A stretch of DNA of 64,000 nucleotides from positions 1 through 64,000 of the forward strand of contig NIVC01000293.1 in NCBI GenBank assembly GCA_002269645.1, written 5' to 3'. The translations under genes were made by a program, and so were the position numbers. Each line of letters opens with the position of its first letter. The stretch's first letter is position 1. The notes below the pieces were generated by a model. That model had not been told where the DNA came from and ran no database searches. It saw only the letters and a program-made list of their open reading frames with translations. Source of the stretch: Macrostomum lignano (taxonomy: Eukaryota). Below are positions 316 through 63,990 of this stretch, one piece after another.

Positions 316-3300
316 ATGAAAACATGCACCAGATTTTTTCGTTACTTTCAACTCATTGTGTTTGGCTTGTTATTTTGGTTTTCTCCATCCGGTACGTTTA
401 TTCTGTTTTGATTAGAGTCAGAAAAAACCAGTTTGCTCTTGCTAAAACGTGGGTTACTAAAAACGCAGAGTGCTGTTCCGGTAGGACGCTTTACTCGTCA
501 TCTGGAACGATCGCGTGCCCCTCCTCTGGAGGCCAGTATTCAAACAATTTGGATGTTTCCTGGTCTATTCGACCACGTGGTGTCAGCCGAATCCGATTCA
601 GCAAGCTGGATGTGGATTCGTGCTGCGACAAAGTTTTAATTTATGAAAGCGCAATCTACGCATCAAGCAGCTCAGAGAAGTTTCGACTTGTGCATGCAAA
701 CGCGACTGAGTCTGAGTTCTGGGTGAATTCCCTTTGTTGTGCGGTTTCGAAGTGACGGGTTTCACACGAGATCCGGATTTCGGCTTTCTTACGAACGCCA
801 GTGGGAATCGATTCCAGGTGAATTTTATGCCTTACGTTTATAACAGCACTCTGGTTGACTTTTGCTGATTTATTTGATCTCGGATGAAAATGGAATTTCA
901 GCTGCTACTGAGGTCATTCGGCAGAGAAGCGGTGTCAGACGGAGCCATCCAGATGTCGGGTCCTACCGCAATAACTACAAAAAAGCTTGGAGTATTTACG
1001 TGCCCAGAAATTCCCGTGTTTTCATTCGATTCACAAAGTTCAACACGGAATCTGGCCGCGACTATCTTAGGATATATTCAGGACTTGTTCCGCGATATCA
1101 ACACACGGCTCTGCAAGCGATTTCAGGCAATCATAGAATTCTTCATCCGTCATACACGTTTTCGCATAGCGTTACCCTAATTTTCACTACTGACGGCTCT
1201 GTTGTCCGTGAAGGGTTCGAATTTGAGTTCAATGTCCGTGAGTGATACAAGACGTCAACAGTATCTGGCAGTTTTTTCAGTTTTATTCAATTCAGAAGTT
1301 AAACTGTTCAGTGCAGAAAATATAAGTTAAAAGTTATGCAATCTTATGTTTATAGTTTCTTTTCTCGGCCAGATACGGACAGAGAAGCAACATAGTTTCC
1401 ATAGTTACTCGTAGTTACATAAATCTGAATAAGTCTCAACATTGTTTATGTTGATGCAGGTTATTTGTACTACGGATTATGCGCCATCGGCCTATCGATT
1501 ATAATGGATAATTAGTTTTAAGCAATGAGAAGAGAACTCTTATAAATTCTCTTTAGATTACATAAATATTATCAACTTCCACAAAAAATCTTAACGCTGC
1601 TACATTTACTCAGTTTGATACTCTTTACAGATGATCATGAATTACTGTGGATCTTTTCAAAATGGACCAGAATGGCCATAGGTGGCTCGAAATTCAGTTT
1701 TTCACTGCTTTCTATGGATCGAAATGTATCAGCTAGGTGTTACTTAGATCTTGAATGTGGAAGGCAAACTTCGGAGATCGCAATGAATTCCGTAAGCCGG
1801 GCATTTATCTGCATTAAATTTTCGAAAAAAGTGCTATATACGAGCGTAATTACTGGTTTAAGTTTTTCTTATAACTTTGCATAGTGAAGGTAATATCTCT
1901 TGACCTTTCAAGTTTGCATTCAAAAGCTTGGACAAATTTAAAGAGCCTCAGATTATATATGAATTGTTTTTGCAATTCCTCCAGACGATCTACTCACAAT
2001 GAAGATCAGTTAAAAAATTGTACCTGTTTTCTGGAATCATCTCAGACACTGCTGTCTGCATTCGAAACATCACGTGCAGATTCCGTGGCAGCGGTATCAA
2101 TGAACTGATTGAATCGACTCCAGCACCTGATGGTAAACAACTTTCTTCAATCAGTTTTTGAGACTCTGCATAGATGTTTTTGAAGAAGCGAAGTGTCTGT
2201 ATTGCAATATTAGCAAAGCGGTTCAGTAACTGTAGCAGATTTTGATTATCCTGCTCTAGTTTCCTTCATACATATGAATAACTTTCAGTTAAGCCAGCTT
2301 CACTTGAAATCAGCCTGATAAAGCCTGAGCTGTGGAGCCTCTCAGATAGTTTGATTCGGTTTCGAGCTGTGTCTCAAGCCGAGTGTCGGCGAGTGAGGCA
2401 TCGCTGCGAGCTGAGGCTTTTCAATGGAAGCGCAGTCACTGCTGTGCAAGTGAAGCGGGTAAGAATAATGTAACAATGCGTAGTTAAAATATTTAGCATA
2501 ATATAATATACTTAGAGTAATTGCTATGATAGGCGTGTACAACTAAACGATGTACACTGTAGGCCCGTACTGATATGCAGATATACGCAATTGTATTTTC
2601 CTTCAATTTACAATACCCAGCTAGCGTATTTTTATTCTGATACAATTGCTACGTCAAAACTTCAGCAAGCATCACAGCCACGTATTTCTCAGTGTGTGAG
2701 CAGAGTTCAAACAGATTTTACTCTGCTGGCTGAGCTCATCGACACAGTCAATTCTACGATAATTTGTTACAAGCAAGCCGGAACAGTCAACTATTCTCTG
2801 CCGGCTATGCAACTGCGTGAGTTGAGTTAAGATTATGAAGTTAATGCATAAATATATGCGTATAATATAAATAATGTATATAGAGCTCATTAAAAACAGG
2901 AATTTTATGTATGCGCATAAAATCACTACGTTAGAATATATAACAGTATATATATAAATATACATAAAAATATATATATATAATATATATATATATAAAT
3001 ATAATATATTAGAATATATAATATATATAACTATAGAATCTTCATACGAGCGTAGAAGCATGATTAGCGATATAGAAAAAAAGCGAGAACGATTACGAAA
3101 GATTTTAACTGATTTATTTTTGTGATTAATTTCATTAATTTTTAATCAAATAATTAACTTATTTGACTCTGTTTTTAAATGAAGTAAAAAGGTGACATTT
3201 GCGAGAGTAGGTTTGCAGAGTTTAAATCATTTGTTCAACGTATGTCATATGTACCAGCTGATTTATTCAATGTTTGGAATGTCGAATAAAGAAAGGTATT

Positions 3301-62700: not shown

Positions 62701-63990
62701 CTGCGTGTCCAGAATCATCTGCAACTTCACCGCACCGAACGGTTGGCACCGAATTGAATCGGTGGTACCTCAAACAGGTTAGAGTTGTGCCGTGTCTAAT
62801 ATAAAGGCTCTACTAGTAGATATGAATTTTGCATGCACAAATTATTCAATACGACAATTTCCCCCCCCCCCCAAAAATAAACTTAGTTCTGCCAAGCACC
62901 ATTCAGATCGACTTAACAACCGAAAGCAGTTGGTCAGAAGAGAGTGAGATCTACTTCACGGCTACATCCTACAACACGTGCTCAAGTGCACGGCACCAGT
63001 GTCAGTTAAGGTTCGACAACGGTAGTACTCAGTTTTTCGAGTCAGTTAGCTTAGTGAGTACGATGCATTCGATTAATTTATTTAACTTATATATCTCCTC
63101 CTTATAAACGCGAGTACAACACTATCTGTTTCAGACACTGAATTACACAACCTACGTTTGCAATACCTCTCTACTCTGCAAACTAGCTTTGCTTTGCCGG
63201 CGAACACATCGATTGTTGAGGGTCACGAAATCGCGTGTCTGCTTTCTGGAGGCGATTTTGAGGTTTATAAGTTTAAAGAGCCTCAAAATGGTAAGCAAAA
63301 AATTAGAAAAATTTGGAATACCTCTCTGTCTGTCTGTCTGTCTGTCTGTCTGTCTGTCTGTCTGTCTGTCTGTCTGTCTGTCTGTCTGTCTGTCTGTCTG
63401 TCTGTCTGTCTGTCTGTCTGTCTGTCTGTCTGTCTGTCTGTCTGTCTGTCTGTCTGTCTGTGTGTCTGTCTGTCTGTCTGTCTGTCTGTCTGTCTGTCTG
63501 TCTGTCTGTCTGTCTGTCTGTCTGTCTGTCTGTCTGTCTGTCTGTCTGTCTGTCTGTGTCTGTCTTTCTGTCCGTCTATCTTTTTGCCACATGGCTAAAA
63601 GCTGTCAAATTAATTACATAAAAATTCAGTTGGATTTTTTGGCATTTCTCCCACGAGTAAAAGTCTCCAACAACAAGTGGAGCTGATACTGCGCACATCC
63701 GCTTCAATAGTTCCAATACTTTTTGTTGCTGCCTCCATTCTGACGGCAGTCTTGGTTGGGCTGAAGCTACATGTAGGTGTACATCAGGAACCTGTGTCAC
63801 CAACGCAGGCTTCACCGAAAACTAACGAAATTCATCCGGAACCTTCGGTCTCTGAAGAGGCTTCGATTCAAGTAAAAAATCCTGTGGTAAGTCAACTTTA
63901 ATGCTTTTTAAAAATCTCAGTATTTTTTTACTGATTTGGTCAATAATTTTTTTTCAGTACACTGACAACATTGAAGTGTATGTTACGTAA
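59721..63990 (+). CDS. Paralog E: SP-CUB-CUB-W-P-W-P-TM-tail (~784 aa if repaired); probable 2-nt frameshift in the last ectodomain exon
   Basis: Predicted exons 59721-59799 ([26 protein letters not shown]), 59908-60270, 60616-60966, 61407-61588, 61684-61846, 61924-62087, 62159-62297, 62344-62552, 62636-62777, 62887-63053, 63135-63290 (156 nt vs 154 in paralogs), 63678-63886 (TM), 63958-63990 ([10 protein letters not shown]). Confidence 0.8.
60276..60498. repeat. (AGT)n microsatellite at the start of intron 2 of E
   Basis: Begins 6 nt after the GTGAGA donor at 60271. Confidence 0.95.
63323..63570. repeat. (TCTG)n microsatellite in the intron before the TM exon of E
   Basis: About 60 tetranucleotide units. 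Confidence 0.97.

What the first reader, a model, noticed from the sequence alone, without database searches (positions are those of the whole stretch)
316..63990. Six-gene tandem array of CUB + unknown-domain single-pass receptors with features of a diversified recognition family
Seen in sequence: six same-strand paralogs with a shared exon plan (signal exon, phase-1 CUB exons, paired phase 1-0 / 0-1 exons, TM exon, terminal micro-exon). They differ strongly in sequence and domain count, one pair is a recent duplicate, and four of six carry lesions. Established knowledge: CUB domains mediate extracellular protein and ligand binding, and tandem arrays with birth-and-death turnover are typical of immune and allorecognition receptor families. 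Inference: this may be an undescribed invertebrate receptor family for pathogen, self/non-self or gamete recognition. I do not recognise this architecture as any named gene.
Basis: partly seen in the sequence, partly recalled or inferred. Interest (0 to 1): 0.88.

Follow-up and report, generated by a model that had tools for sequence, protein, structure and literature searches.

The report
Flatworm CUB plus Ig-like receptor array
A stretch of the flatworm Macrostomum lignano genome carries six tandem copies (two intact, four damaged) of an uncharacterised, apparently species-restricted cell-surface protein built from CUB domains and a previously unclassified pair of Ig-like domains. It is real and tidy, but nothing yet shows that it is an immune or self-recognition system.

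Summary
Six same-strand paralogs span window 316-63990, each with a signal exon, phase-1 CUB exons, paired 1-0/0-1 exons, a TM exon and a terminal micro-exon ending ...VY(V/L)(T/N)-stop. The other four carry stops or frame breaks.

The DNA is Macrostomum lignano. One gene matches the annotated 'hypothetical protein BOX15_Mlig017866g1'.

The 'unknown domain' is two tandem Ig-like beta-sandwiches, one per exon pair (AlphaFold2 pLDDT 81-89; Foldseek gives fold-level hits to antibody and TCR domains). It has no Pfam match. A profile search of 1.84 billion representatives found it only in M. lignano proteins, plus two weak, unrelated-looking hits.

Genes have either 2 CUB + 4 Ig-like domains or 4 CUB + 2 Ig-like domains, made by duplicating two-domain units.

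The family is small: six genes here, one more locus elsewhere, and copies on other M. lignano contigs. Pairwise dN/dS is 0.3-0.6, and I found no expression or polymorphism data.

Best reading: a lineage-specific family of type I surface binding or adhesion receptors that evolves by tandem duplication, gene conversion and decay. The immune, allorecognition or gamete role is untested.

The parts
316..4771 (+). Gene A (2 CUB + 4 Ig-like + TM), probable pseudogene. Exons: 316-391, 469-817, 902-1237, 1631-1791, 1985-2132, 2289-2458, 2666-2816, 3342-3505, 3711-3852, 3957-4123, 4194-4347, 4422-4648, 4739-4771.
   Evidence: tblastn with P0002. Splice sites. The 2-bp deletion at about 729 is shown, and the TGA at about 2000. 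P0007 lacks the frameshift.
16007..22733 (+). Gene B, the recent duplicate of A (2 CUB + 4 Ig-like + TM), 759 codons with one premature TGA at codon 322 (about 20099). Exons: 16007-16082, 16160-16510, 16600-16935, 19716-19876, 20060-20207, 20369-20538, 20744-20894, 21276-21439, 21639-21780, 21907-22073, 22148-22301, 22384-22610, 22701-22733. An extra copy of the first Ig exon lies at 17285-17450 and has no donor site.
   Evidence: The intragenic duplication 17017-17444 vs 19447-19875 is 95.8% identical.
29738..35313 (+). Gene C (4 CUB + 2 Ig-like + TM), intact, 807 aa. Exons: 29738-29816, 30920-31282, 31358-31708, 31791-32186, 32271-32663, 33261-33409, 33492-33651, 34021-34187, 34263-34416, 35014-35198, 35287-35313.
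   Evidence: The model is identical to annotated P0001 (BOX15_Mlig017866g1) from CUB2 to the stop, apart from one residue.
39448..44547 (+). Gene D (4 CUB + 2 Ig-like + TM), intact ORF, 809 aa. The last Ig exon and the TM exon are fused into one 387-nt exon. Exons: 39448-39520, 40020-40388, 40554-40898, 41376-41783, 42223-42564, 42859-43007, 43094-43253, 43328-43491, 43568-43954, 44515-44547.
   Evidence: No annotated protein for D was found in the database.
48603..53587 (+). Gene E (4 CUB + 2 Ig-like + TM), pseudogene-like, with an in-frame stop in CUB2 (about 49938) and a frameshift in CUB4 (about 51110). Exons: 48603-48654, 49353-49715, 49792-50136, 50395-50751, 50879-51215, 52328-52476, 52575-52734, 52807-52970, 53048-53201, 53282-53490, 53555-53587.
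59721..63990 (+). Gene F (2 CUB + 4 Ig-like + TM), the most divergent copy. Its last Ig exon (63135-63290) is out of phase with its neighbours and has a Cys-to-Tyr change. Exons: 59721-59799, 59908-60270, 60616-60966, 61437-61588, 61684-61846, 61924-62087, 62159-62297, 62383-62552, 62633-62777, 62887-63053, 63135-63290, 63678-63886, 63958-63990.
   Evidence: Public gene models of this gene (P0003, P0004) skip the affected exon.
33261..34416 (+). The 'unknown' module in gene C. Exons 33261-33409 and 33492-33651 encode Ig-like domain 1. Exons 34021-34187 and 34263-34416 encode Ig-like domain 2.
   Evidence: AlphaFold2 models: pLDDT 81, pTM 0.77, and pLDDT 89 for domain 2 alone. Foldseek PDB hits are to Fab and TCR chains and Ig constant-type domains. 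There is no Pfam hit.
4739..4771 (+). Example of the conserved terminal micro-exon (PDDSTGVYVT*). The equivalents lie at 22701-22733, 35287-35313, 44515-44547, 53555-53587 and 63958-63990.

Best explanation
The window is Macrostomum lignano DNA. It holds a head-to-tail array of six paralogous genes for type I single-pass membrane glycoproteins.

**Protein plan**
- A signal peptide.
- Two or four CUB domains.
- One or two copies of a roughly 205-residue module made of two Ig-like beta-sandwich domains. Each domain is encoded by a 1-0/0-1 exon pair.
- A TM helix.
- A 45-60 residue cytoplasmic tail with no enzyme domain. It carries tyrosine motifs (YENS, NPxY-like) and a conserved C-terminal ...VYVT encoded by its own micro-exon.

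**How the family evolves (shown)**
- Tandem gene duplication.
- Duplication of phase-symmetric two-domain units: CUB1-CUB2 became CUB3-CUB4, and the Ig pair was doubled.
- Gene conversion between neighbours.
- Pseudogenisation: two of the six copies are intact.

**How it works (inferred)**
- The proteins are cell-surface binding or adhesion receptors, or co-receptors.
- The membrane-distal CUB1 binds an extracellular protein ligand. In five of six copies it keeps the Glu/Asp/Asp positions that bind calcium in ligand-binding CUB domains.
- The Ig-like domains act as a stalk or second binding surface.
- The tail couples to adaptors or sorting machinery through its tyrosines and C-terminus.
For: - **Species and annotation:**
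- **Six paralogs and exon plan:**
- **CUB identity:**
- **Ig-like fold of the module:**. UniProt's automatic name for one fragment is 'Ig-like domain-containing protein'.
- **Restriction to M. lignano:** of 12 hits among 1.84 billion representatives, 10 are M. lignano proteins.
- **Internal unit duplication:** hhalign gives CUB3~CUB1 and CUB4~CUB2, and A/B/F carry two modules.
- **Gene conversion:** A and B are 92.7% identical over the 5' 1.3 kb but 84-85% in the 3' part. B is 92.5% identical to the other-contig copy L001 in the 3' part but 83% in the 5' part.
- **Tail motifs and conserved C-terminus:**
- **Acidic triad in CUB1/CUB2:** read directly from the translated exons, using established knowledge of calcium-binding CUB domains.
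Against: - No transcript, expression, localisation or binding data were reachable, so function is inferred from architecture alone.
- Only two of six copies are intact, and D has no annotated protein in public data.
- Some D splice sites are weak.
- CUB3 and CUB4 are too divergent for Pfam.
- The Ig-like assignment is at fold level only (TM about 0.5, 8-14% identity).
- The cysteines form C-x5/6-C pairs, not the classical Ig B-F pair.
Confidence: 0.7

Rival explanations
1. One reading: a diversified recognition family for immunity, allorecognition or gamete recognition. Variable ectodomains would discriminate pathogens, non-self tissue or a partner's gametes, and birth-and-death turnover would be driven by diversifying selection.
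For: - A lineage-restricted tandem array with pseudogenes and domain-count variation.
- The membrane-distal Ig-like domain is the most divergent part, at 18-29% identity against 43-53% for the membrane-proximal one.
- In the A/B comparison, the first Ig exon has dN 0.13 against dS 0.095.
- M. lignano is a hermaphrodite studied for seminal-fluid effects and postcopulatory conflict (papers listed).
Against: - The family is small: about seven gene types.
- Whole-gene dN/dS is 0.34-0.61, and the highest value comes from a pair of pseudogenes.
- The exon with dN above dS rests on 15 against 3 substitutions.
- No polymorphism, induction or tissue data are available.
- Divergence and decay are equally expected under relaxed constraint after whole-genome duplication (PMC10733133).
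Confidence: 0.12
2. Auxiliary subunits or co-receptors in the manner of NETO, LEV-10, SOL-1 or neuropilin. The CUB ectodomain would bind and modulate another membrane receptor or ion channel instead of acting as a primary receptor.
For: - The design is a multi-CUB single-pass protein with a short non-catalytic tail.
- Acidic calcium-site residues are retained in CUB1 (sequences).
- It rests on established knowledge that multi-CUB single-pass proteins often serve as receptor auxiliaries.
Against: - None of the LDLa, FA58C or MAM domains that accompany CUB in those families are present.
- No sequence relationship beyond generic CUB similarity. The best PDB sequence hits are C1r, PCPE-1 and MASP at E about 1e-6.
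- Auxiliary subunits are usually conserved single-copy genes, not a decaying species-restricted array.
Confidence: 0.13
3. A largely non-functional relic. After polyploidisation and tandem duplication the array is decaying, and the intact-looking C and D are simply copies not yet hit. Alternatively, some lesions are long-read assembly errors and more copies are intact than they appear.
For: - Four of six copies carry stops or frame breaks.
- A/B dN/dS is 0.61.
- A's 2-bp deletion is absent from the P0007 model derived from another assembly.
- M. lignano carries three subgenomes.
Against: - C differs from its other-contig copy with dN/dS 0.42, and B from the intact P0002 gene with 0.34. That indicates purifying selection on at least some copies.
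- The terminal VYVT micro-exon, the cysteine pattern and the exon phases are conserved across paralogs as low as 18-30% identical.
Confidence: 0.1

Closest known systems
CDCP1 (Trask) and similar CUB-only single-pass receptors
   Same: A type I membrane protein whose ectodomain is made of CUB or CUB-like domains, with a short non-catalytic tail whose tyrosines are the signalling elements. This comparison rests on my own knowledge. The tail tyrosines of the flatworm proteins are shown.
   Different: No sequence similarity was detected. CDCP1 has no Ig-like module next to the membrane. The flatworm genes form a species-restricted tandem array.
NETO1/2, LEV-10, SOL-1 and neuropilins (CUB-containing auxiliary or co-receptors)
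   Same: Two to five extracellular CUB domains, one TM helix and a short tail. CUB1 retains the calcium-site acidic residues typical of ligand-binding CUBs.
   Different: LDLa, FA58C and MAM domains are absent, and Ig-like pairs take their place. There is no orthology signal. Those families are conserved across phyla, whereas this one was found only in M. lignano.
CUZD1 and DMBT1 type CUB + zona pellucida (ZP) proteins
   Same: CUB domains are followed by a roughly 200-residue, eight-cysteine, two-beta-sandwich region just before a TM helix.
   Different: - No Pfam Zona_pellucida hit at E up to 10.
- The cysteines sit in C-x5/6-C pairs, unlike the ZP spacing.
- There is no furin-type site before the TM.
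- Foldseek's top 50 hits are antibody and TCR chains, not ZP structures.
- The module can be tandemly doubled.
Tandem IgSF recognition arrays (for example Hydractinia Alr genes, snail FREPs, vertebrate KIR/LILR)
   Same: Clustered single-pass receptors with Ig-like ectodomains, variable domain number, gene conversion and pseudogenes.
   Different: - No sequence relationship was found.
- These proteins are CUB-tipped.
- The family has about seven types.
- No evidence of hyper-polymorphism or positive selection.

Membership tests
CUB domain superfamily (Pfam PF00431) | Profile HMM match above the curated cutoff | tested here: met
   B CUB1 scores 34.3 bits and B CUB2 40.3 bits against a cutoff of 21.4. 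C scores 37.3 bits and D 55 bits as whole proteins. CUB3 and CUB4 are below Pfam detection but match the family's own CUB1 and CUB2 profiles at 98.6% and 98.1% hhalign probability.
CUB domain superfamily (calcium-binding subtype) | Glu / Asp / Asp acidic triad at the ligand-binding face | tested here: inconclusive
   Read by eye from the translated exons. The triad is present in CUB1 of A-E and in CUB2 of A, B and F, and incomplete elsewhere. The positions were assigned by motif only, with no structural alignment or binding test.
Zona pellucida (ZP) module proteins such as CUZD1 and DMBT1 | PF00100 match, ZP-N/ZP-C cysteine spacing, and a furin-type cleavage site before the TM | tested here: not met
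   No Zona_pellucida hit at E up to 10. The cysteines form C-x5/6-C pairs. No R-x-K/R-R site precedes the TM. None of Foldseek's top 50 hits is a ZP protein.
Immunoglobulin superfamily (classical Ig domains) | Ig-like beta-sandwich fold | tested here: met
   The two-domain model aligns to Fab L/H and TCR gamma chains at E 1e-6 to 1e-4. The single-domain model aligns to TCR C-gamma, IgNAR C3 and IgM C4 with TM about 0.5.
Immunoglobulin superfamily (classical Ig domains) | Sequence-profile match to Ig/I-set/V-set/C1/C2 models and the canonical B-F disulfide with a core Trp | tested here: not met
   No Pfam Ig-family hit on exons or whole proteins. The conserved cysteines are short-range C-x5/6-C pairs.
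HYR / HYR_4C (hyalin repeat) domains | Profile similarity over the whole domain | tested here: not met
   The module profile touches the HYR_4C repeats of the 4538-aa protein P0012 only over a roughly 50-residue C-x5-C hairpin region (E 3e-6 summed over repeats). hhalign probability is about 1%.
NETO / LEV-10 / SOL-1 / neuropilin co-receptors | CUB domains combined with LDLa, FA58C or MAM domains, and cross-phylum orthology | tested here: not met
   Pfam finds no such domains. Word-indexed protein searches returned only M. lignano proteins for C and nothing at all for D.
Polymorphic immune or allorecognition receptor families | High allelic polymorphism, diversifying selection, and induced or tissue-appropriate expression | not testable with these tools
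   Only three genomic copies from one inbred line could be compared. Pairwise dN/dS is 0.34-0.61. No population or expression data are available.

The most novel reading that the evidence does not exclude
The array is a Macrostomum-specific, rapidly turning-over cell-surface recognition system built on a new Ig-like module. It could, for example, mediate partner, sperm or self/non-self discrimination in this reciprocally mating hermaphrodite. Variation would be concentrated in the membrane-distal Ig-like and CUB domains and generated by gene conversion among array members and the copies on other contigs.
Probability: 0.1. Interest if true: 0.75.

Novelty: new variant of a known kind. Interest (0 to 1): 0.4.

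Why it matters
If the intact copies are expressed, this is an uncharacterised, taxonomically restricted receptor family in a transgenic, RNAi-tractable flatworm model. It contains an Ig-like two-domain module that no domain library covers.

It also gives a clean example of how phase-symmetric exon units (CUB pairs, Ig pairs) are shuffled and doubled inside a tandem array, and of gene conversion and decay in a neopolyploid genome.

In practical terms, the models here supply the missing 5' exons of BOX15_Mlig017866g1 and give gene D a model for which I found no public annotation.

As it stands, this is a solid annotation result and a candidate for expression and knock-down screens. It is not evidence of a new immune or allorecognition system.

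Tried and rejected
- **ZP-module hypothesis (CUB + ZP + TM, as in CUZD1).** Rejected: no Pfam hit, wrong cysteine spacing, no furin site, and no ZP structures among the top Foldseek hits.
- **HYR-domain hypothesis.** It was raised by a weak HMM hit to a Calx-beta/HYR_4C giant protein. Rejected by hhalign at about 1% probability.
- **Word-indexed protein searches.** Gene C returned only itself and one paralog. Gene D returned nothing, because candidate selection is limited by shared words.
- **Profile search job.** It ran after I rebuilt the alignment from database-held sequences.
- **Literature.** Searches for the locus tags and for CUB-domain work in Macrostomum found nothing relevant.
- **RNA genes.** Rfam and tRNA scans of the window were empty.
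- **Selection tests.** Whole-gene Nei-Gojobori dN/dS gave no sign of positive selection. Site models were not attempted because there are too few sequences.
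Full report
**What the window is.** The composition and open reading frames are eukaryotic: 35-55% GC, short exons, many minisatellites and transposon fragments. A spliced model of the third gene hit 'hypothetical protein BOX15_Mlig017866g1 [Macrostomum lignano]' at 100% local identity (P0001).
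- The contig holding P0001 (NIVC01000254.1, locus L002) is 98-99.5% identical to the window.
- A second contig (NIVC01000829.1, L001) carries a more divergent copy of the same region, 83-97% identical.
- This fits the published picture of M. lignano as a neopolyploid with three subgenomes (PMC10733133).

**Checking the observation.** All-vs-all BLASTP of + strand ORFs and tblastx between sub-regions show six collinear + strand paralogs. I rebuilt every gene at canonical AG/GT sites.
- a signal exon ending in phase 1
- CUB exons of 336-408 nt in phase 1-1
- pairs of exons in phase 1-0 then 0-1
- a TM exon in phase 1-0
- a terminal 27-33 nt micro-exon

Two independent checks support the models. 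P0001 reproduces my C model from CUB2 to the stop with one residue different. P0002, encoded by the counterpart of B on contig NIVC01000829.1, reproduces the A/B-type plan.

My genes C and D give intact ORFs of 807 and 809 aa.

**Lesions.** The four damaged genes are:
- **A:** a 2-bp deletion in CUB1 and a TGA in an Ig exon.
- **B:** a single TGA at codon 322, plus an extra donor-less copy of one exon that flanks a 1.2-kb minisatellite.
- **E:** a stop in CUB2 and a frameshift in CUB4.
- **F:** a phase mismatch at the acceptor of its last Ig exon.

One caveat applies. A gene model from another assembly (P0007) reads through A's CUB1 with no frameshift, so that lesion may be an assembly error or a polymorphism.

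**Domains.**
- Pfam CUB scores above its cutoff on CUB1 and CUB2.
- The third and fourth 'CUB' exons of C, D and E are invisible to Pfam. Profile-profile comparison puts CUB3 with CUB1 (98.6%) and CUB4 with CUB2 (98.1%). C, D and E therefore arose by doubling a CUB1-CUB2 unit.
- The C-terminal 'unknown' region is a module of about 205 residues and eight cysteines, encoded by two exon pairs. It occurs once in C/D/E and twice in A/B/F.
- AlphaFold2 on an eight-row paralog alignment gave an all-beta model (pLDDT 81, pTM 0.77). Foldseek against the PDB returned two-domain immunoglobulin chains (Fab L/H, TCR gamma) at E 1e-6 to 1e-4.
- The membrane-proximal half modelled alone reached pLDDT 89. It gave only fold-level matches (TM about 0.5, 8-14% identity) to TCR C-gamma, IgNAR C3 and IgM C4, and to a few unrelated beta-sandwiches.
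- Each 1-0/0-1 exon pair therefore encodes one Ig-like beta-sandwich. By sequence these domains are orphans: no Pfam Ig, FN3, HYR or ZP hit, and their cysteines form C-x5/6-C pairs, not the classical Ig pair.
- ZP and HYR relationships were tested and not supported.

**Distribution.** An exhaustive HMM search of 1.84 billion representative proteins with the module profile found 12 hits.
- Ten are M. lignano proteins. Most are fragmentary or mis-spliced models of these same genes.
- The other two are a Calx-beta/HYR giant protein and a bacterial Ig/PKD repeat protein, at E 3e-6 and 1e-5. They match short stretches only.
- One further family member (P0010 cluster: 2 CUB + 1 module + TM, tail ...SEVYVTLPN) sits alone at a separate locus.
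- The family is thus about seven gene types, each with copies on other contigs, and is undetectable outside M. lignano at this sensitivity.

**Evolutionary dynamics.**
- Paralogs other than A/B share 18-66% identity by domain. The membrane-distal Ig-like domain is the most divergent (18-29%), and the membrane-proximal one is better conserved (43-53%).
- A and B lie in a duplicated segment of roughly 9-12 kb, with dS about 0.11 and dN/dS 0.61. B against the intact P0002 gene gives 0.34. C against its L001 copy gives 0.42.
- Identity is mosaic. A and B are 92.7% identical across the promoter-to-CUB2 region but 84-85% downstream. B and L001 show the reverse pattern. This indicates gene conversion or recombination within the family.
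- Nothing points to diversifying selection beyond one exon with very small counts.

**Mechanism.**
- *Shown:* type I topology (signal peptide, one TM helix), a heavily N-glycosylatable ectodomain (10-13 sequons), no catalytic domain, and a conserved tail end.
- *Inferred:* CUB1 keeps the Glu/Asp/Asp positions that bind calcium and a basic ligand residue in C1r/C1s, MASP and cubilin-type CUBs, in five of six genes. The tails carry YENS (D, E), NPYK (C), QYYGE (A, B) and the terminal VYVT.
- I therefore read these as surface binding or adhesion receptors, or co-receptors, that signal or traffic through tail tyrosines.
It has no positive support here, and the family is small.

**Verdict.** The 'unknown domain' is resolved as an orphan Ig-like pair. 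I rate the novelty as a new variant of a known kind, namely multi-CUB single-pass receptors. Interest is moderate, well below the first-stage score.

Noticed in passing
window 17017-17444 vs 19447-19875; minisatellite 17880-19040: Inside gene B, the first Ig exon and its upstream intron are duplicated at 95.8% identity. The two copies flank a 23-bp minisatellite of about 50 units. The upstream exon copy has lost its donor site. The copy of this region on contig L001 lacks the duplication.
   Followed up: partly
window 1-1284 vs 15688-16982, and 1462-4958 vs 19543-22924; L001 9635-15007: Identity is mosaic. A and B are 92.7% identical from the promoter to CUB2 but 84-85% downstream, while B and the L001 copy are 83% identical in the 5' part and 92.5% in the 3' part. 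This looks like gene conversion or recombination between array members and the other-contig copy.
   Followed up: partly
window 60276-60499: An (AGT) microsatellite of about 75 units begins six bases after the CUB1 donor of gene F. It is in frame with the exon and would read as poly-Ser if the donor were skipped.
   Followed up: no
window 63325-63581: A (TCTG) microsatellite of about 65 units fills the intron between F's out-of-phase last Ig exon and its TM exon.
   Followed up: no
window 19182-19284, 24801-25035, 37174-37612; L002 15584-20138: Related 17-18 bp minisatellites (units TGCTTGCTATCTGGGGG, TGCTATCTGGGGGATGCT and TCTGGGGGATGCTTGCTG) occur in B's intron and downstream of genes B and C. 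The near-identical contig L002 has about 4.5 kb more sequence at the 37049 junction, so the array length differs between copies.
   Followed up: partly
window 46100-47980 (GC about 54%): A retroelement fragment lies between genes D and E. It has a zinc-knuckle-like ORF (46513-46890) and a reverse-transcriptase fragment (Pfam RVT_1, E 6.5e-11, at 47461-47784).
   Followed up: partly
window 11530-11955 (- strand): A weak, sub-threshold match to a piggyBac-type DDE transposase (PF13843, 20.6 bits against a cutoff of 22.4) lies between genes A and B. Next to it is a 16-bp minisatellite (10594-10953) with strong GC skew.
   Followed up: no
window 44257-44277, also 48218: A second possible terminal micro-exon (SCVYVT*) lies about 240 bp upstream of D's GISLTGVYVT* exon. 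An isolated ...NVYLS* reading lies upstream of gene E. These may be remnants of duplicated terminal exons.
   Followed up: no
window 43568-43954: Gene D has no usable donor between its last Ig exon and its TM exon. The two are read as one 387-nt exon, which suggests intron loss or in-frame retention specific to this copy.
   Followed up: partly
window 21374-21749 vs L002 333: The near-identical contig NIVC01000254.1 lacks 375 bp of B's intron. Its encoded C protein (P0001) differs from the window's C protein by one residue, Cys where the window has Phe. The window is therefore a distinct haplotype or assembly version.
   Followed up: partly
L003 9100-13754 (NIVC01004028.1): A seventh family member (P0010 cluster: 2 CUB + 1 Ig-like module + TM, tail ending SEVYVTLPN) lies at a separate locus, with no other family gene within 10 kb on either side.
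   Followed up: partly
public models P0003-P0009: UniProt and WormBase-derived models of these genes are fragmentary. They skip damaged exons or run out of frame, and some carry misleading automatic names such as 'CST complex subunit CTC1' and 'Glyco_hydro_38C domain-containing protein'.
   Followed up: partly
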